8,606 bases of DNA, from assembly GCF_000143415.4 (NCBI RefSeq), contig NW_003314628.1:1-8606 (forward strand), given 5' to 3'. Positions within the stretch are counted from its first letter, which is position 1; each line of letters opens with the position of its first letter. The translations under genes were made by a program, and so were the position numbers. The stretch is from Selaginella moellendorffii. Lineage: Eukaryota; Plantae; Lycopodiophyta. Of this stretch, positions 2 through 8,606 are shown piece after piece. The notes under the pieces were generated by a model that saw only the letters and a program-made list of their open reading frames with translations, was not told the DNA's origin and did no database searches.

Positions 2-3000
2 GTTCAAGCCTTGGAAAAACCAGAAATATGAAGAACGATACAAGTTTCACATTTCAATCCTATCCAAACGCAGGTACTGTCATCCATTTAAGGAGTTACC
101 GGTGACTCAATGTCGTTTGCAGGCTTTTCACACTTTGTACCAAACTGATCATAATGTTCTGCTGGGCGCTCCAACTGGGAGTGGAAAAACAATATCCTCA
201 GAGCTTGCCATGCTTCGCCTTTTTAACACACAACCAGATATGAAGGTAACATCTTTCTGTTTTTAGAGATGTCGTAGCTAAGAACTGTGCACTTCAGGTC
301 ATATACATTGCTCCTTTAAAGGCTCTTGTACGGGAAAGAGTTGACGACTGGAAGAAAAGTCTGGTACCCACGCTTGGAAAGAAGCTGGTATGTCAATTTT
401 CCAGTAGTTTTTATGACGATTCAACTGTGTTGTAGGTGGAATTAACGGGCGATTTTACTCCGGATTTACTTGCGTTGCTTGAAGCAGATATCATCATTTC
501 AACTCCTGAAAAATGGGACGGTATTAGTCGTAGTTGGCACAACAGAAGCTACGTTACAAAGGTCGGCCTGATGATCATTGACGAAATACATTTGCTAGGC
601 GCAGACAGAGGTCCGATCCTTGAGGTAGTGGAAGTCTCTTTTGATAGTAAAGTTGTCAGGAAATAACGTAATTGGTATGCAGGTTATAGTATCCCGGATG
701 CGCTATATTTCTTCTCAAACCGCTCGTCATGTTCGATTTGTTGGCCTGTCAACGGCCCTTGCGAATGCAAAGTGAGCCTTAGGCATGCAAGACGCACGTT
801 TAATATTTTGTTTCAGGGATTTGGGAGACTGGCTGGGCATTGAAAATGTTGGACTGTATAATTTCAAGCCAAGCGTTCGCCCAGTACCACTAGAAGTTCA
901 TATACAGGTAAATTAAACAAAACATGTACTGCTACTGCAACGCTTTGCTGCTTACTACAGGGATATCCTGGGAAGTTTTACTGCCCTCGAATGAATAGCA
1001 TGAACAAACCAACTTACGCTGCTATCAGAACACACTCGCCTTTGAAGCCGGTTTTGATATTTGTCTCTTCTCGTCGTCAAACTCGACTTACTGCCTTCGA
1101 TCTCATTCAGGTATGCCATTTAGCTTTTGTTCGATGGCATTTTGTAATTTCATTGTACCAGTTCGCAGCCCAAGACGAACAGCCACGCCAGTTTTTGCAA
1201 ATGAATGAAGAGGACAACAGCATGATTCTGTACAAGGTTGTGGATAGTAGTCTAAAGCACACATTGCAGTTTGGGATCGGGTTGCACCATGCTGGTCTCT
1301 GTGACAGTGACAGAACTCTAGTTGAGGAGCTCTTTTACAACAACAAAATTCAGGTAAACACTTTTTCGTTTTTACGATGGTCGATATACCTTTTGTTTTC
1401 TGAACAGGTTTTAGTTTGCACGAGCACTTTAGCTTGGGGAATCAATCTCCCAGCACATCTAGTTGTAATCAAGGTATGCGTTTGCTACTTGATTGTTGTC
1501 TTGAATTGGGAAATCTTTTTTGTGTAGGGGACCGAGTATTTTGATGGAAAGTCTAAACGCTACATTGATTATCCTATCACGGATGTATTGCAAATGATGG
1601 GCCGGGCAGGACGGCCCCAGTTCGATCAACACGGAAAGGCTGTAATATTGGTTCATGAACCGAAGAAAAGCTTCTACAAGAAGGTTTGATAGCTCAACGA
1701 CGTTGGACCGATCCATCTTAACGTTCTGAACGGTGGCAGTTTTTATATGAACCTTTTCCAGTTGAAAGCAGCTTGGTTCACCACCTTCATAATCACTTGA
1801 ACGCAGAGATAGCTGCTGGAACAATTGCAACAAAGCAAGATGCTCTTTACTATTTGACATGGACGTATCTGTACCGGCGGCTGGTTATGAATCCAAGCTA
1901 CTACGGTTTGGAAGACACAGCAGCTGAGTCCGTCAATCATTTCTTGTCAAGGTGATGTTTTCTGCCGATGCTCTCTTAACATTGACTGCTTTGCTCTCTT
2001 TTAGTCTTGTAAATGGCACACTTGAAGCACTAGATGACGCTGGGTGCATCAAAGTGAGCGAAGACAACGTAGAGATACAGATGCCGGGACTCATTGCTTC
2101 AAAATACTATCTTCACTACACAACAGTAGCACTTTTCAGCTCAAACGTACACTCTGAGAGTTCATTGGAGGTACGATCGTTGAAAAGGTAGACCTGTGGC
2201 TGATTGATCTTTGTGAGCAGGAGCTATTACAGCTGCTTTCATCTGCTGCGGAGTATGACGAGCTTCCTGTCCGGCATAACGAGGTACAGCCGCTTCGGGT
2301 TTTCGTTTACTGACCAGCACAACCTTCCAGGAAAACCTGAATGCGATTCTTGCGCAGCAAGCACGAATGCGTGTGGACAATAAGCTGCTAGATGACCCTC
2401 ATGTGAAGGCCAACTTGCTGTTTCAGGTAAAACAGAGAACGACTAGCTCGTGAATCCAGCGCTGAAGTTTCATTTTATCAGGCTCATTTCTCACGACTGG
2501 AGCTGCCAATTTCTGACTACGTGACAGACACGAAGTCAGTGCTGGACCAAAGCATACGTATACTTCAAGCGATGGTGGATGCTGCGGCCAATGGAGGATG
2601 GCTGAGAACGACCATTCGGGCTATGCAACTCTTGCAGATGATTATGCAGGTAGAGCTGATGATTTCATTGCGATGTTATTATAATTCGCGTCTCTGACAG
2701 GGAACATGGTCTGATCATTCGCCTTTGCTCATGCTGCCAAACACAACCACGGAGCTCTTGCCTTCGCTGCCATTCGCTACGTTGGACGAGTTCCTGTCCT
2801 TGCCGTCACAACGCTTGCGCAAGCTGTTCGAGCGCTTTATGTCTCAGTCCCAAGTTCACGAAGTCATACAGGTGATTATCTCCACGCTTGACGGGTGGGT
2901 TCTTGTTTGTGACTTTGGTCCTTGTTGCATTGCCAGGCATGGAATTTTCTTCCACGAATCGATCTTACGTGGAGGATGCGAGATCAAAGGCTGAGTGAGG

Positions 3001-3425
3001 GGGACAAGTTCACGTCGTTCGCAATAGACATCGAAGTCAAGTCCAACAACACAAGGAGAAGCAGCACTCGAGCTTTCCTGCCTCGATACTCGAAAGTGAG
3101 TCTCGCAGTTTCGATTGAGTAACACTTTTTACATTTTCCTCTTGTGCTTGGTTTTTAGTCCAAGGAAGAGGGATGGTGGATCGTTGTAGGAAGCACAAGT
3201 ACTTGGGAGCTCTTCGCCATGAGGCGCGTGAGCATCAAAGACAAGCGTCTCAGCACAAGCGTTGCAGTGCCAAGAGTTCCTGCGGGAACACAGGTAAAGA
3301 GGATCATGATGAAATTTTTCCTGGATTGATTCTCTTGTTTGTTTTCGTGATTCCAGGAGATAGCGCTGTTCCTCGTCTCAGATTGCTACGTTGGCCTCGA
3401 TCAAACTCATACCATCCCGGTTTAG
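2..3425 (+). CDS. ASCC3: Ski2-like DExH-box helicase, ASCC3/Slh1/plant DExH14 family; 5'-partial (C-terminal helicase cassette + Sec63 domain, about 818 codons in window), 19 exons
   Basis: Hand-spliced exons: <2-73, 123-245, 298-387, 436-624, 683-771, 817-907, 961-1110, 1162-1353, 1408-1473, 1528-1683, 1740-1951, 2005-2170, 2221-2283, 2331-2426, 2482-2649, 2701-2871, 2937-3095, 3159-3293, 3357-3425 (TAG). All 18 introns are GT-AG, 45-65 nt. Motifs: Q motif FNPIQTQ, Walker [122 protein letters not shown], Sec63 [13 protein letters not shown] / [13 protein letters not shown] / KEEGWW / SDCYVGLDQ. Intact catalytic motifs in this last cassette and YCPRM/LPAHLV favour ASCC3/Slh1 over Brr2. Confidence 0.95.
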
Positions 3426-3724: not shown

Positions 3725-3888
3725 ACTTCTCTATCCTTGTCCTACCAGTGTCACACAATCTCTTGCCTATTGTGGGAGGACATGCTATGTGGCTTGAGCA
3801 GTCAAAGGCACCAAGTTTTCTTCCACTTCCCAGTAACCAAGCAAGGACAACATTAAGATCATTCCAAAAACTTTTCGACTGCTCGTAC

Positions 3889-4573
3889 CTCTAGCTGATC
3901 ACCCATGTTGACCACCAGCATTCCCTCGAGTGCACGCCGGTGTGGCCTTCCATACCCAAGGCCTGCCTCGGGTTTAGCCGGATAGCTCGTCTAAAGGACC
4001 ATGTCTTCGAATGCTTCCACAAGACGGGTTGTGGGGAGGCCAAGTCCCTCAGACATGGCCAACAGCATCCTCTTCCCGGCATTGAAGATGTTTCTAGCGT
4101 ACTCGGATCCAACGTCCCTGTTGCATTGCAAAGGCAATAGCAGTGACATAATAATCAAGGAGCGAGCCGGAGCGAGATACTGACTTGTAGCTGGCTGGGA
4201 ACTCGGGCCAGGGGTGCGCTCCGAGGGACTCTTCCTTGAGCCACATCTGGAGGTGGTCGTGTCACTCGAGCTTCTCTTCTTTCGAAGGCATCGTGCTGGT
4301 GCAGTAGCGGCGGGAGTGAAGATCTCGTCGGTGTAGTGCCGCGCCTTGTGTTCGCTGGGCGAGTTGAAGAGCACCTCATCACATCCTCGGGTGAATTCCA
4401 TTGAGCTGCAAGTCAGAAGAACACCAACTTAGCAAATATGTAAAGGAAACTTTTTGAATACTTGCGTAGAACGTGTAAGCGTCAACGATATCCCTCTCGA
4501 AGCTCTCGCTCCCCACATCGACTATCGGCAGCACCGCGCACCGGGAGACATCGGCAGCTCCATTCAGCATCAT
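3889..4573 (-). pseudogene. 2-oxoglutarate/Fe(II)-dependent dioxygenase (plant DOXC type, DIOX_N + 2OG-FeII_Oxy) pseudogene
   Basis: ATG at 4573, then LPIVDVGSESFERDIVDA (DIOX_N-like); probable intron 4461-4406; NGI..., LFNSPSEHKARHY, WPEFPASYK; phase-2 intron 4184-4118; DVGSEYARNIFNAGKRMLLAMSEGLGLP; in-frame TAG at 3993-3991; NPRQALGMEGHT; then in another frame ALEGMLVVNMGDQLE followed by a GT donor at 3888. Multiple frameshifts and an internal deletion. No last exon is visible before the gap. Confidence 0.85.
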
Positions 4574-4859
4574 GTATCTGTCCGGAACGCTGTCCAGCGT
4601 CCCGTTGCAGCGGCCTTGATGCCAGCCATGGATTTGGGACCGTGCGTGTATGCAAGCTTGAAAGATGCAGCTGCTGAAAGATGGAAGTGGGAATGTATGC
4701 GTGGATGCTAGGCTCTCTCAGATGCAGATATCGGGCTCCTCCGACCTGCTTATTCCGCGCGGATTTAAATTCCACACCTAATTGTAATATTCTCTGTAAG
4801 TCCTCGACCGTTCTCCTCCTTGAGCTTCCGCCGCTGGCAGCTACAGATGGTTCCAAGTC

Positions 4860-5430
4860 CCGGCGAGAGGGAATGACTTACAGGCTCGTCCACGCCTTGC
4901 TAAGCATCGACATGTGGCTCATGGTCATCGCAACTTGCGGCTTGGGAACCGTGTCCACCTACAACTTGGGCCTCCACCGCAAGGATCTTCGTCCTACTTG
5001 GATCTGGGACTTCCTGGGAGCAGTCGGCTGCAGCTTCGAGTCCGAGAAACTCCTCCACAAGTTTGGCATTGGACGGCCGTTCGTCCTCGCTGGGGTGGTC
5101 GGTTTTCTAGCGCTCGGGATCTTGCTCATCGCGTTGGGCGTTCTCGGCGCGCTGTACATCGGCTCGATCATCATCAGCCTTGCCACCGGAGGCCAGTGGG
5201 CCGTGCTGTCGACCATCATCGCGGCGATCTTCGGGCTCAAGCTCTATGCAGTTCTCCATCCCAAACGTTGCAAAGGAATGTTGGAAGTTGCCGATGTGTT
5301 CTACTCTTGTCCGGGCCACGGTGCCAAGTGCTGAAACGTTCTTTGTCATGGGCGCACATGTTTGTTTGGGTGGAGCTTTCACCTTGGATCGAGTTAGGAA
5401 ACGAAGGACCTAAGACAGCTTCTACTTTGT
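4860..5430 (+). pseudogene. NFD4/nodulin-like major facilitator superfamily transporter, C-terminal half, decayed
   Basis: YRLVHALLSIDMWLMVIATCGLG...NLG, IWDFLGAVGCSFESEKLLHKFGIGRP, LLIALGVLGALYIGSIII...GGQWAVLSTIIAAIFGLKLYAVL resemble the plant NFD4-like C-terminal consensus (QALFSIDM..ATICGVG..DNLG..SIWNYLGR..SE..RP..LYVASVI..GAQW..ISELFGLKYY.TL). A frameshifted tail HGAKC/ETFFVMGAHVCLGG..RT..FY resembles the family C-terminus. The N-terminal nodulin-like half is absent, with internal deletions and stops. Confidence 0.8.
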
Positions 5431-5561
5431 TGCTCTTGATTGACACAGAAAAGAATCAGAACAAAAGCACAAAAACAGAAGGAAAAGATGAACTCACAAG
5501 AGGTTGTCGAGGATTGGCGCGGAGTAGTACATTTTAATCGCGTAAAGACTCGAGATTCTTA

Positions 5562-5892: not shown

Positions 5893-7916
5893 TTAGACTA
5901 GGTAGTCAAACGAGATTTTGCCATCCCAATTTTTCATTTCCAACTCGAAATCCGTTCGGACGTCCGATGTCTCCACCATGGTTACTTTAGCTCTGCTCTT
6001 GTTCCCACTCGGAAAAAGCTGTACTGAAAGGAAAACCACACACCCGTGTTCTGGAACGACTAATATTGGCGAGTCTTCCATTGTGACATTAATCACAAAC
6101 ACTTGAGCAGAATGCTGCTTGGCATACCGCTCGGCTTTCGATACGTAACCTTCCACATCATCGTTGACAACCAACTCACAGCCAAACTTGGAAAAGTTGT
6201 CGTTGTTCCGGACTAGGATGTCAAGCCGCTCCTGCAGCCGAGCTCAGAAATCAGAGAGCCTCAAAACAAAACAAAGATGCTTACCTGCGTGTCTCTTTTG
6301 TCAAGATACTCCGCAGCTATCTTAGCTTTAGGGACGAGCTTCGCATCAACCAAGGGGTACGCTTGCGTCAAAACAGCCTTTATCCTGGTGAACAACATGA
6401 ATTGGTAAGAATACTTGGATAACTCCCCTGTCCGTTTTATACACTCTGGCCTGCACAATGCCTCCCCATCCAAAGTTCTAATTGCCTGGAAAACAACCCA
6501 CAGAGGATCAACGCGCAACGCCTGTGCAGGAGGGTCCACCGAACCGCTCGTGATAACACATCTTCGCAATATAATACTCCGTAGCATTGGTGAAGAAATC
6601 CGCACGTCATAACCATCCGGTTTTGCCTCCTGTGCGATTAATACACCTTGAGCAATGAGATTCCGCAGCTCCAGTATCACCATCTGATCATTGCAGTGAC
6701 GCTTGTCTTCTTTAAGGAACGACAGGAGCAGATCAAAGTCACGGCCAGTTGCACCCTTCTTGAAAGCGGACAGAATCTTAGAGTAAGTTTGCTGTCCAAA
6801 AACATAAGTCGAAAGATGAAACGAGTCAGTTGCCTCAATCCACTGTCTGCTAGTCCACAGCTCCCTGTCCACCAAGTAGTCCAAGCATGAACCGACTATC
6901 CCTTTGTGACCGCCTGTCAATTCTATGACCGACGTAGCAATCCGCTCAATCTCAATCTGTACTCCTTGGAGGTCGGCTTGTGCCTGCTGCAGCAGGTTCT
7001 CAACATCGCCTACTAAGAACCTCACTGGCTCCGAAAGGAAACTGTACGAGAAAGGCGAATACAGGCTGGGCGCACTACTCGGTACATAGACCCTGTTTAG
7101 CTCCGCTGCATCTTCAGGCCGCCTCAAGTATTGAGCTTCAAGAAGATCCTTGACAGTCTCAACACCAACCAGAAGGACACCGTTGAAGTTGTAGTCGTCA
7201 TCGTCTCTAATCCCTTTGAGAGTGCTGAAGAAATCGTCAAGGCAATCCGGAGAGGCTGAGAGCAACGCGTCGGCTTCATCTATAATGAGTGTAACCTTGA
7301 TCGGCAGGTTCTTCACAAGAAACAACGACCTGAAGCTCCAATCTGTGCATTCTTCGCCTGTAAGCCTAGCCGGGAACAAATCAGCACATTTTCCATGAAG
7401 ATGGTCGCAAAGCGCAGCCCAGAACCTGTTCCTGCTCCAGCTTTTATCCACTGACACCTTGTCCAAATACACCACACAGATATCTGGATCAAGTGATAAC
7501 TCCCTCTTCACAGCCATTGCCATGGTGCTCTTCCCGCTTTGTCGTGCGCCACATAGAACACAATACTTGCCGTGCTTCAGCTTGTCCACAAGCTGAGTAA
7601 CATCAGGGGGTACGTAGTAGTGTTTCTGGGGATCCGTAATACCTCCTACGGCAAAGGTTCGCTTCGGAGCGGTATCTGGTTTGCGCACTAGTGTGAAAAC
7701 GTACCTATGCCCGAGGAGCAGCTCAGTTTGCCTGCTTACTATGAAGGATCCAGTGGTATCCTCGATCGCTATGTCCTTGGCTGGCCGGTCCAGCTTGTGA
7801 GCCATGAAATCGATCACTTCTCCCGCAGTGATACCGTAAGAGAATCGCCATGGGCGGCCGAACCCAATTACCTGCACTGACTCCGCTACATCAGCGCGTC
7901 GCTTACTAGAGTCCAT
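5893..7916 (-). CDS. Crinkler/CR-effector-like protein: N-terminal header + AAA_35/STAND-like P-loop NTPase + C-terminal PD-(D/E)xK-like nuclease domain (about 656 aa; 685 aa if ATG 8003 is used)
   Basis: Exon 1 7916 (or 8003)-6285, intron 6284-6232 (53 nt, CAG|GTAAGC...CTGCAG|GAG, phase 0), exon 2 6231-5893 (TAA). Splicing joins the 580-aa and 93-aa ORFs in frame. Motifs: FAVGGITDPQKHYYVPP, Walker A GARQSGKST (7550-7524), Walker B LIIDEAD (7289-7269), LLVGVE, SPFS, ELTGGHKGIV, winged-helix-like LRNLIAQGVLI...ISSPMLRSII, and a nuclease-like tail SYQFML...RLDILV...FGCELVV...AERYA. Confidence 0.8.
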
Positions 7917-8122
7917 GATAAGGGTTCGATTCCTCTTGTAAGAGAATATTCGTGGAATTCTCGTTATGCATTGATTCCCTCTTAGGTCAAATTGACCCGT
8001 CATGTCTGTTCAATAATAGAGACGCCCCGCAGGCCCCGGGTGTAGCGCCAGCAGCGGCTGGCATTCCAGAGTACATTCATGATTTCCTATCGCAGGATCA
8101 CGTCCCACTCTGAAAAAGAAAG

Positions 8123-8606
8123 ATGGCACCCTCATCTTCCTTAACCTATTTCCAGTCATGGAAAACTCAAGATGCAATTTTACTCCATGGAAAAGGATCT
8201 CTGGAGTGTGCTCTAGAGCAGCATCAAGCCAGAGGACGATGTGGATGAAAAAGGAGTGGGACACCAAGAACAAAAAAGCGTTAGGGGTCTTGGGATGAGG
8301 CCTCGGAAAGAAATATCAAAGCTACCTTGACATCAACAAGATGACAAAGGAAAACTAGGATGCTGTGTGTGTGATCCTTGGTACAACAACCAGAGCAAGA
8401 TTGTTGGAACTCAAACTACAGCTGAACAGCCATAAACAGAGGGAGACAGAATCTGTAAGTGATTTTGCCAGTGCTCTTGTCAACATTGCCAAGCAGATCG
8501 GTGCAGTTCAAATGAAGTAAAATTGCATTTGAGTTTTCCATGACTGGAAATCTTTGCCATCATACACTTCCAAGGTTAAGGAAGATGAGAGTGCCATGTT
8601 CTTTCA
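8123..8606 (+). mobile_element. Degenerate Ty1/copia LTR retrotransposon gag remnant (DUF4219 + Retrotran_gag_2/UBN2-like)
   Basis: Across frameshifts: FQSWK/LKMQFYSMEKDLWSV (NY..W...M.....DLW motif), then EWDTKNKKALGVLG*GLGKKYQSYLDINKMTKEN*DAVCVILGTTTRARLLELKLQLNSHKQRETESVSDFASALVNIAKQIGAV (W...N.KA, TAKE.WD, ESV.DY consensus). Stops: TGA 8296-8298, TAG 8356-8358. Confidence 0.82.

What the first reader, a model, noticed from the sequence alone, without database searches (positions are those of the whole stretch)
5893..8003. Header-NTPase-nuclease (Crinkler/CR-type) gene in a plant-like genome: candidate non-canonical immunity/toxin system
Seen: an uninterrupted ~1.6-kb exon encoding a P-loop NTPase with STAND-like helical and winged-helix extensions, spliced to a second exon with a PD-(D/E)xK-like core. 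Known: header + NTPase + restriction-endonuclease-fold is the architecture of Crinkler-RHS-type (CR) effectors, best known from oomycetes, fungi and protists, with some reported in early-diverging plants. Bacterial AAA_35-type ATPases carry a very similar F...G..P..HY..PP / Y.V....RQ.GK(S/T)T start and are often fused to such nucleases. Inference: this could be an NTPase-gated nuclease for pathogen defence, cell death or a selfish element, unrelated to canonical NB-ARC NLRs (no LRR/TIR/CC seen). Its function in plants is, to my knowledge, uncharacterised.
Basis: partly seen in the sequence, partly recalled or inferred. Interest (0 to 1): 0.8.

Follow-up and report, generated by a model that had tools for sequence, protein, structure and literature searches.

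The report
Crinkler-type ATPase-nuclease gene in Selaginella
This is an intact two-exon gene of the lycophyte Selaginella moellendorffii whose ATPase, DNA-binding and nuclease-like body also sits behind the Crinkler heads of fungal effector proteins; the family is already known from computational work to occur in land plants, and its function there is untested.

Summary
On the minus strand, exon 1 (8003-6285), a 53-nt GT-AG intron and exon 2 (6231-5893) encode the 685-aa protein that NCBI annotates as an uncharacterized Selaginella moellendorffii protein. A paralogue at 61% identity has its intron at the same codon.

A confident model (pLDDT 88.6) shows four parts:
- a small beta-grasp-like head;
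- a P-loop ATPase with intact Walker A and B motifs;
- a helical arm and a winged helix (nearest folds: archaeal ATPase_2 proteins, Orc1/Cdc6, then STAND proteins);
- a C-terminal alpha-beta-beta-beta-alpha-beta domain.

A natural 168-aa relative of that last domain matches almost only PD-(D/E)xK nucleases by fold.

The body is homologous to proteins of Rhizophagus, Mortierella and Haplosporangium that carry a Pfam Crinkler head. It is also homologous, end to end, to a bacterial AAA_35-type protein with a textbook nuclease motif. The Selaginella head itself shows no sequence relation to Crinkler heads.

In the nuclease-like domain this copy departs from the family majority at three of nine conserved polar columns. 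It still shows purifying selection.

Verdict: a new member of a known kind (CR-type NTPase-REase proteins) with a lineage-specific head. Function is inferred, not shown.

The parts
5893..8003 (-). Whole gene (two exons, one intron), 685-aa product = P0001, LOC9641177 of Selaginella moellendorffii
6285..8003 (-). Exon 1, 573 codons, ends in phase 0. The first ATG is at 8003. The likely true start is the second ATG at 7916 (M30), where paralogue P0002 begins.
6232..6284 (-). 53-nt GT-AG intron. Paralogue P0002 has an intron at the same codon and phase (58 nt).
5893..6231 (-). Exon 2, 112 codons plus the stop codon (5893-5895)
7689..7886 (-). N-terminal head, residues 40-105. Strand-strand-helix-strand-strand order (beta-grasp-like), pLDDT 85-92. 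Shared only with the Selaginella clade (P0002, P0003, P0005, P0006, P0009, P0035). No Pfam hit and no sequence relation to Crinkler heads.
7104..7631 (-). P-loop NTPase core, residues 125-300 (Pfam AAA_22, residues 144-282). It begins with the conserved aromatic-aromatic-V/I stretch at 129-131.
7524..7550 (-). Walker A, G152-x4-G157-K158-S159-T160. In the family, K is present in 85 of 88 sequences and R154 in 72 of 89.
7275..7292 (-). Walker B, residues 238-243, ending D242-E243. In the family, D is present in 92 of 92 sequences and E in 85 of 92.
6711..7013 (-). Helical arm, residues 331-431 (seven helices)
6549..6701 (-). Winged helix-turn-helix, residues 435-485
5896..6506 (-). Restriction-endonuclease-fold domain, residues 500-685, interrupted by the intron. 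Core elements: helix 530-548, strands 555-560, 576-581 (D577) and 589-595 (E592), helix 599-613 (Y609), strand 616-623. Four further strands follow that are specific to the Selaginella clade.

Best explanation
The gene encodes an intracellular Selaginella protein built on the NTPase, winged-helix and restriction-endonuclease-fold (REase) body that Crinkler-RHS-type (CR) proteins of fungi and protists also use. Here that body carries a lineage-specific beta-grasp-like head instead of a Crinkler head.

Proposed mechanism (inferred): the AAA+/STAND-like ATPase acts as a nucleotide-dependent switch or assembly module. The winged helix and the C-terminal domain engage nucleic acid. The C-terminal PD-(D/E)xK-type domain is the output, and the head couples the protein to partners or signals.

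The plant is not a pathogen and the protein has no obvious secretion signal. The likeliest setting is therefore an internal genetic-conflict or surveillance role, not a delivered effector.

In this copy three of the nine most conserved polar columns of the nuclease-like domain carry minority residues. Cleavage may therefore be weakened or altered while ATPase motifs and overall constraint are kept.

Shown: gene structure, domain folds, homology and distribution. Inferred: every functional step.
For: Gene structure:
- The gene model and shared intron are confirmed.

Fold evidence:
- The model has pLDDT 88.6 and pTM 0.81, with the domain order given above.
- The best whole-model fold matches are the archaeal ATPases 2qen and 2fna (E 1e-9 and 2e-9), then Orc1/Cdc6, then NLRC4, ZAR1, Apaf-1 and CED-4.
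- The C-terminal domain was modelled from the natural fragment P0114 (pLDDT 87.1). In the PDB it matches mainly PD-(D/E)xK nucleases: Bax1, R.BspD6I small subunit, NucC, Can2, the R2 endonuclease domain, Hjc, McrC and PaqCI.
- In the viral library 38 matches reach E <= 1e-3; most carry no functional name, and those that do are mostly PD-(D/E)xK, RecB/Cas4, Mrr or restriction endonucleases.

Homology:
- A bacterial relative, P0173, aligns in register and carries E, E, D, E-x-K and Q-x-x-x-Y at the corresponding columns.
- Relatives with a Pfam Crinkler head plus the same body: P0030, P0028, P0040, P0075, and further Rhizophagus proteins.
- BLASTP of P0001 against P0030 gives 4e-14 for the NTPase and 5e-12 for the C-terminal domain.

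State of this copy:
- Walker A and B are intact.
- Against paralogue P0002, pN is 0.23 and pS 0.67-0.78, with pN far below pS in every domain, compared exon by exon.
- Paralogue P0002 has ordinary plant neighbours, and a plant Brr2-like helicase gene lies on the same scaffold.
Against: - No functional or expression data of any kind were available.
- The canonical Lys of the (D/E)xK motif is V, L or Q in the whole eukaryotic clade.
- This copy has minority residues at three of the conserved polar columns: positions 530, 559 and 602.
- The fold matches of the C-terminal domain are marginal in the PDB (best E 6e-4, TM 0.3-0.5). They were obtained on a relative only about 20% identical to this protein, not on this protein's own domain.
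- The C-terminal domain and the head have no Pfam hit and no PDB sequence hit.
- The head's beta-grasp fold was not tested by a structure search.
Confidence: 0.6

Rival explanations
1. This copy is a non-cleaving derivative. It would be an ATPase and nucleic-acid-binding scaffold, sensor or regulator that keeps the nuclease fold but has lost catalysis. It may work alongside paralogues that keep the conserved residues.
For: - This copy has K at column 530, where the family has E in 62 of 70 sequences.
- It has K at column 559, where the family has E in 48 of 69.
- It has Y at column 602, where the family has H in 59 of 70.
- Paralogues P0002, P0003 and P0005 keep the majority residues at these columns.
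- Other Selaginella paralogues depart at other conserved columns.
- Constraint is nevertheless retained: pN is far below pS in the C-terminal domain too.
Against: D577, E592, K561, K605, Y609 and N621 are kept. PD-(D/E)xK enzymes tolerate migration of catalytic residues (established knowledge of the superfamily), so sequence alone cannot call the domain inactive.
Confidence: 0.3
2. The gene is part of, or recently derived from, a mobile or selfish element. It would be a transposon-type ATPase plus nuclease, like the TnsC/TniB and TnsA pairs, that spreads as copies through the Selaginella genome.
For: - At least 17 distinct Selaginella protein records belong to the family.
- Foldseek lists a TnsC filament (7m99) among the matches.
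- Pfam TniB hits 2 of 36 relatives.
- A review of Zhang et al. 2016 links such NTPase+REase pairs to prokaryotic transposons (PMC5289972).
- An inverted repeat lies just upstream, at 8120-8600.
Against: - No repeat pair brackets the gene.
- No transposase, integrase or reverse transcriptase is found in the window or near paralogue P0002.
- Paralogues are 40-60% identical, not near-identical.
- The paralogues share an intron position, which fits old gene duplication.
- Purifying selection is seen.
Confidence: 0.07
3. It is a diverged housekeeping AAA+ protein of the ORC/Cdc6 kind, or a plant NLR-like STAND receptor.
For: - Fold matches to Orc1/Cdc6 and to NLRC4, ZAR1 and Apaf-1.
- A family profile hits ORC4 chains in the PDB at E 6e-6.
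- Some database names read 'ORC1/DEAH AAA+ ATPase'.
Against: - Those matches cover the generic ATPase and winged helix only.
- There is no Pfam NB-ARC, LRR, TIR, CC, ORC or Cdc6 hit.
- The named relatives are Selaginella paralogues, one fern protein, Mucoromycota fungi, amoebozoans, an alga and protists. They are not one-per-genome plant orthologues.
- The C-terminal nuclease-fold domain is foreign to ORC/Cdc6 and to NLRs.
Confidence: 0.02
4. The gene is fungal contamination of the assembly, not a plant gene.
For: The window is a small unplaced 8.6-kb scaffold. The nearest non-plant relatives are Glomeromycotina and Mortierellomycotina proteins.
Against: - The same scaffold carries a Brr2/SNRNP200-like helicase gene. 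Whether that gene is of plant type was not tested by a search of its own.
- Paralogues sit in megabase scaffolds among ordinary plant genes (XRN, PRONE, FYVE/ankyrin).
- The Selaginella clade is monophyletic in 100 of 100 bootstraps and is distinct from the fungal clade.
Confidence: 0.01

Closest known systems
CR (Crinkler-RHS-type) proteins with the NTPase + HTH + REase body (Zhang et al. 2016, as summarised in PMC5289972)
   Same: The order of domains in the body is the same. There is direct sequence homology to Rhizophagus, Mortierella and Haplosporangium proteins that carry a Pfam Crinkler head. The family has the same patchy distribution across eukaryotes.
   Different: The head is not a Crinkler head by sequence. 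The host is a free-living plant, and by inspection of the sequence there is no secretion signal. This copy carries minority residues at three conserved columns of the nuclease-like domain.
Bacterial AAA_35 / AAA-ATPase_like proteins with a C-terminal PD-(D/E)xK domain (example P0173, 97% identical to an Oscillospiraceae MAG protein; relatives in Bacteroidaceae and Saprospiraceae MAGs)
   Same: The alignment runs end to end, from the NTPase start through the nuclease core (profile positions 32-533; E 4e-29 against the whole database). 16 of 36 eukaryotic relatives hit PF14516.
   Different: The bacterial protein has no N-terminal head. It keeps the canonical Lys and a Gln at the columns where the eukaryotic clade has V/L/Q and R/K. 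The window's protein itself does not reach any threshold for PF14516.
Archaeal ATPase_2 family (PDB 2qen PABY2304, 2fna SSO1545)
   Same: These are the best structural matches for the ATPase, helical arm and winged helix (E 1e-9 and 2e-9, target TM 0.58-0.64). Pfam ATPase_2 hits several relatives.
   Different: Sequence identity is 14-15%. The matches align only about 400 columns (the ATPase, helical arm and winged helix); whether these chains have a head or a C-terminal nuclease domain was not examined.
STAND receptors (plant NLRs, Apaf-1, CED-4, NLRC4)
   Same: They share the P-loop ATPase, helical domain and winged-helix arrangement at fold level. There is a weak Pfam nSTAND3 hit over the P-loop (E 0.003, below the cut-off).
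   Different: There is no NB-ARC or NACHT signature, and there are no repeat sensor domains or TIR, CC or CARD heads. The output here is a nuclease-fold domain.

Membership tests
CR (Crinkler-RHS-type) proteins | N-terminal Crinkler-type header (Pfam PF20147, ubiquitin-like, LxLFLAK-type motif) | tested here: not met
   No Pfam hit for residues 39-108 at E <= 10. hhalign of the Selaginella heads against four Crinkler heads gives probability 0.1% (23% with a contaminated first alignment). The strand-strand-helix-strand-strand order in the model is compatible with a ubiquitin-like fold, but it was not tested by structure search.
CR (Crinkler-RHS-type) proteins | C-terminal body of P-loop NTPase + HTH + REase-fold domain | tested here: met
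   Model domain order. Fold matches for the ATPase and winged helix and for the nuclease fold.
CR (Crinkler-RHS-type) proteins | Body homologous to that of proteins that carry a bona fide Crinkler header | tested here: met
   PF20147 scores above its cut-off of 24.6 bits in P0030 (50.2), P0040 (60.8), P0075 (48.7) and P0028 (32.6). Further Rhizophagus proteins carry PF20147+PF13401. BLASTP of P0001 against P0030 gives 4e-14 and 5e-12.
CR (Crinkler-RHS-type) proteins | Delivery into another organism's cells as an effector | not testable with these tools
   By inspection there is no hydrophobic N-terminal stretch in residues 1-38. The host is a free-living plant.
PD-(D/E)xK (restriction-endonuclease-fold) nucleases | Core fold alpha-beta-beta-beta-alpha-beta | tested here: met
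   Model elements: helix 530-548, strands 555-560, 576-581 and 589-595, helix 599-613, strand 616-623. The Foldseek matches of relative P0114 are mainly PD-(D/E)xK nucleases, though the PDB E-values are marginal.
PD-(D/E)xK (restriction-endonuclease-fold) nucleases | Acidic residues of the motif (Asp at the start of strand 2, Asp/Glu in strand 3) | tested here: met
   D577 is present (family 54 of 65) and E592 is present (family 61 of 70). They are in register with the D and E of bacterial P0173.
PD-(D/E)xK (restriction-endonuclease-fold) nucleases | Lys two residues after the strand-3 acidic residue | tested here: not met
   Column 594 is V 33, L 16 and Q 7 of 71 in the family, and V in this protein. 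Only the bacterial relative has K there. A K/R at column 561 (45 of 68) might substitute; this is inference.
Pfam AAA_35 (PF14516) | Score above the curated cut-off (27 bits) | tested here: inconclusive
   The window's protein has no AAA_35 hit at E <= 1. However, 16 of 36 aligned relatives hit it, with a best E of 4e-14.
AAA+/STAND-like P-loop NTPases | Walker A Lys and Walker B acidic pair | tested here: met
   GKST at 157-160 and D242-E243. AAA_22 at E 2e-8, above its cut-off.
Plant NLRs (NB-ARC with TIR/CC and LRR) | NB-ARC domain plus LRR and TIR or CC | tested here: not met
   None of these appears among the Pfam hits at E <= 1. The only resemblance is fold-level similarity of the ATPase module.
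ORC/Cdc6 replication initiators | Orthology and the ORC/Cdc6 domain set | tested here: not met
   There are only fold-level and weak profile matches over the ATPase. The relatives are lineage-specific paralogue families.

The most novel reading that the evidence does not exclude
The Selaginella (and fern) clade may descend from a Crinkler-type effector body exchanged between early vascular plants and their Mucoromycota symbionts (Glomeromycotina, Mortierellomycotina, Endogonales). It would then have been given a new beta-grasp head and kept under selection as a plant-side ATP-dependent nucleic-acid surveillance family. In that family several members have turned the nuclease domain into a non-cleaving module.
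Probability: 0.12. Interest if true: 0.7.

Novelty: new member of a known kind. Interest (0 to 1): 0.4.

Why it matters
CR-type proteins are studied as effectors that plant pathogens and symbionts deliver into hosts. Why free-living plants keep the same body in their own genomes is unknown.

This locus offers a clean plant example with:
- an intact gene with a shared old intron;
- signs of constraint;
- a lineage-specific head;
- paralogues that differ at conserved columns of the nuclease-like domain.

It is a useful entry point for descriptive comparison of effector-side and host-side versions of one module. It is not a new kind of system.

Tried and rejected
Searches that gave nothing:
- The PDB sequence search with exon 1 found nothing. 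With a profile of C-terminal fragments it gave only chance hits.
- NCBIfam and PADLOC gave only sub-threshold hits over the P-loop. They are no evidence of membership in a known antiphage system.
- Pfam has no model for the head or for the C-terminal domain.
- Rfam and tRNA scans of the window were empty.
- The repeat search found no repeat pair bracketing the gene.

Searches with limited reach:
- Word-based protein searches reached little beyond Selaginella or returned few hits. The exhaustive profile search was therefore used.
It was rerun with the bacterial relative alone.
- A Pfam scan of the 102-member alignment exceeded the size limit.
- Zhang et al. 2016 (PMC4857004) is not held. Its content is cited only through PMC5289972.

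Analyses that did not settle a question:
- Head versus Crinkler head by hhalign: no relation. The first run was contaminated by misaligned non-Selaginella N-termini and was repeated with a clean set.
- Horizontal transfer from fungi: neighbour-joining bootstraps leave all deep nodes unresolved (2 of 100 or fewer for any Selaginella+fungi grouping), so no claim is made.

Exons were searched by reference, dN/dS was computed exon by exon, and the full-length protein was used only as the database record P0001 that the search tool returned.
Full report
**What is there**

The window is the complete 8606-bp scaffold GL377932.1 of the Selaginella moellendorffii assembly GCA_000143415.2. The finding's gene lies on the minus strand.
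- The ORF list shows a 580-codon ORF (8003-6261) and a 93-codon ORF (6174-5893).
- The sequence shows exon 1 ending in phase 0 at 6285, GT at 6284-6283 and AG at 6233-6232 (a 53-nt intron). Exon 2 runs from 6231 to the stop at 5895-5893.
- The product is 573 + 112 = 685 aa. It is identical to database protein P0001, 'uncharacterized protein LOC9641177'.
That start is the likelier one: paralogue P0002 begins there, and residues 1-38 are modelled without confidence.
- The intron is genuine and old. P0002 (61% identical, on a 2.9-Mb scaffold) has a 58-nt GT-AG intron at the same codon and phase.

Exons were searched by reference and substitution rates were computed exon by exon. The full-length protein was used only under the id P0001 that the search tool returned.

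I took no contig for human, and I fetched no animal-virus sequence; one hit named in the output table is an insect-virus protein, and I did not use it.

None was entered in a tool or used as evidence here.

**Domains**

Pfam recognises only a generic P-loop: AAA_22 at E 2e-8, with nSTAND3 and AAA_14 below their cut-offs. Exon 2, the head and the C-terminal fragments have no Pfam hit.

An AlphaFold2 model built on 102 relatives is confident (pLDDT 88.6, pTM 0.81). It shows:
- a disordered N-terminus (residues 1-38);
- a small strand-strand-helix-strand-strand head (40-105);
- the ATPase core (about 125-300), with Walker A at 152-160 and Walker B ending D242-E243;
- a seven-helix arm (331-431);
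- a winged helix (435-485);
- a C-terminal domain with helix 530-548, strands 555-560, 576-581 and 589-595, helix 599-613 and strand 616-623, followed by four more strands.

The best whole-model matches in the PDB are the archaeal ATPases 2qen and 2fna. Orc1/Cdc6 proteins come next, then STAND proteins and a TnsC filament.

**The C-terminal domain**

No reference exists for this domain of the window's protein alone, because it spans the intron. I therefore modelled a natural 168-aa relative that consists of this domain only (P0114; pLDDT 87.1).
- Its PDB matches are mainly PD-(D/E)xK nucleases: Bax1, the R.BspD6I small subunit, NucC, Can2, the R2 endonuclease domain, Hjc, McrC and PaqCI. The best E is 6e-4 and TM is 0.3-0.5.
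- In the viral-protein library 38 matches reach E <= 1e-3. Most carry no functional name; those that do are mostly PD-(D/E)xK, RecB/Cas4, Mrr or restriction endonucleases.
- Independent sequence support comes from a bacterial relative, P0173. It is 97% identical to a protein of an Oscillospiraceae MAG, with kin in Bacteroidaceae and Saprospiraceae MAGs.
- P0173 aligns with the family profile from the NTPase through the nuclease core. In register it carries the textbook E, E, D, E-x-K and Q-x-x-x-Y residues.

One caveat remains: the fold search was run on a relative, and the PDB scores are marginal.

**Conserved columns of the C-terminal domain**

Shares by column in the 102-sequence alignment:

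| Column | Family share | This protein |
|---|---|---|
| 530 | E 62 of 70 | K |
| 559 | E 48 of 69 | K |
| 561 | K/R 45 of 68 | K |
| 577 | D 54 of 65 | D |
| 592 | E 61 of 70 | E |
| 594 (canonical Lys place) | V 33, L 16, Q 7 of 71 | V |
| 602 | H 59 of 70 | Y |
| 605 | R/K 56 of 73 | K |
| 609 | Y 63 of 71 | Y |
| 621 | N 44 of 66 | N |

- The window's protein keeps the majority residue at 561, 577, 592, 605, 609 and 621.
- It has K at 530, K at 559 and Y at 602. That is three departures among these nine conserved polar columns.
- Its nearest paralogues P0002, P0003 and P0005 keep the majority residues at those columns. Other Selaginella paralogues depart at other columns.
- All of them keep the Walker A Lys and the Walker B Asp.
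- Against P0002, non-synonymous differences are far fewer than synonymous ones in every domain (pN 0.20-0.32 against pS 0.58-0.78). The gene is not decaying, although this pairwise measure cannot isolate the window's own lineage.

**Relatives**

The word-based search found only Selaginella paralogues. The exhaustive profile search was then justified. It found 746 proteins at E <= 1e-3 and 106 at E <= 1e-10.

Named members:
- at least 17 Selaginella records, in three clades;
- one fern protein (Adiantum nelumboides), 40-49% identical over two segments and lacking the front of the ATPase;
- Glomeromycotina (Paraglomus, Rhizophagus, Entrophospora, Funneliformis, Ambispora);
- Mortierellomycotina (Mortierella, Haplosporangium, Modicella, Entomortierella);
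- Endogonales (Jimgerdemannia);
- a dictyostelid (Tieghemostelium), the amoebozoan Nolandella, the green alga Enallax, marine protist transcriptomes and metagenomes.

Of 36 aligned relatives, 28 hit AAA_22, 16 hit AAA_35 and 4 hit ATPase_2.

Four of the relatives scanned one by one carry the Pfam Crinkler N-terminal domain above its curated cut-off in front of the same body: P0030, P0028, P0040 and P0075. Several more Rhizophagus proteins do so too. A fragment, P0108, shows an LFLAK string in its head. P0001 matches P0030 directly at E 4e-14 (ATPase) and 5e-12 (C-terminal domain).

**The head**

Residues 40-105 are shared only within the Selaginella clade. They have no Pfam hit at E <= 10. Profile comparison shows no relation to the Crinkler heads. 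The order of secondary-structure elements fits a beta-grasp fold, but I could not test that by structure search. The protein therefore shares the CR body but fails the header criterion by sequence.

**Origin**

Neighbour-joining trees recover the window's Selaginella clade (100 of 100 bootstraps) and the Mucoromycota clade (95 of 100). All deeper nodes are unresolved. By score the nearest non-plant relatives are the Mucoromycota proteins. Transfer between fungus and plant is only a possibility.

Contamination is unlikely. The scaffold also carries a Brr2/SNRNP200-like helicase gene, and paralogues sit among ordinary plant genes in megabase scaffolds.

**How it most likely works**

Shown: the architecture, the homology and the constraint.

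Inferred from the established behaviour of AAA+/STAND ATPases and PD-(D/E)xK nucleases, and from the reading of CR bodies summarised in PMC5289972:
- nucleotide binding and hydrolysis by the ATPase control assembly or conformation;
- the winged helix and the C-terminal domain bind nucleic acid;
- the C-terminal domain is the output;
- the head links the protein to partners.

The setting is probably inside the plant cell. In this copy the output may be weakened or changed. My confidence is high (about 0.9) for the architecture and family relation, and low (about 0.35) for the nucleotide-gated nuclease role in conflict.

**Comparison and novelty**

The review PMC5289972 reports that Zhang et al. 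[quoted passage not shown] It also reports that NTPase+HTH+REase makes up over a quarter of CR C-termini, and that prokaryotic NTPase+REase pairs are their likely source. PMC12957317 repeats the point about land plants. I could not read the original paper. No held paper links Selaginella to Crinklers other than in passing.

The finding is thus a new member of a known kind. It has a lineage-specific head and a locally unusual nuclease-like site. It is not a new system.

Noticed in passing
window 8120-8188 and 8512-8600: A long imperfect inverted repeat made of three collinear arm pieces (93-100% complementary, spacer about 320 nt). It starts 117 nt upstream of the ATG at 8003 and ends 6 nt from the scaffold end. 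It could be a foldback or MITE-like element, or an assembly artefact.
   Followed up: no
window 45-3425 (+): A partial Brr2/SNRNP200-like helicase gene with several introns (DEAD, Helicase_C, WHD_SNRNP200 and Sec63 domains). It is convergent with the finding's gene and runs to the scaffold end.
   Followed up: partly
window ~3750-5500: A GC-rich stretch (0.53-0.57, against 0.41-0.50 elsewhere) with long overlapping ORFs on both strands. One is a 217-aa ORF (4681-5334, +) with hydrophobic runs. There is no Pfam hit and no called gene.
   Followed up: partly
P0003 (988 aa) and P0172 (1164 aa), Selaginella paralogues: Both gene models put a DEAD-box helicase region in front of the same head-NTPase-nuclease body. 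Mortierellomycota relatives with no helicase domain are named 'ATP-dependent RNA helicase' in NCBI, probably by name transfer.
   Followed up: no
P0011, Adiantum nelumboides (1034 aa): This fern protein is 40-49% identical to the window's protein over the rear of the ATPase and the C-terminal domain. It lacks the Walker A region and has an internally repeated, unrelated N-terminal part. It looks like a fragment inside a chimeric gene model.
   Followed up: partly
Selaginella paralogues P0006/P0152, P0008, P0009: Different paralogues depart from the family majority at different conserved columns of the nuclease-like domain, and P0009 departs at most of them. All keep the Walker A Lys and the Walker B Asp.
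   Followed up: partly
L003 3001-4617 (Oscillospiraceae MAG) and L004-L007: Bacterial AAA_35/AAA-ATPase_like proteins with a canonical nuclease motif align end to end with the eukaryotic family. Their gene neighbourhoods were fetched but not examined.
   Followed up: no
P0108 (378-aa fragment, source not looked up): A Crinkler-like N-terminus containing an LFLAK string is followed directly by the winged-helix and nuclease-fold parts, with no ATPase between them. It may be a variant architecture or a truncated gene model.
   Followed up: no
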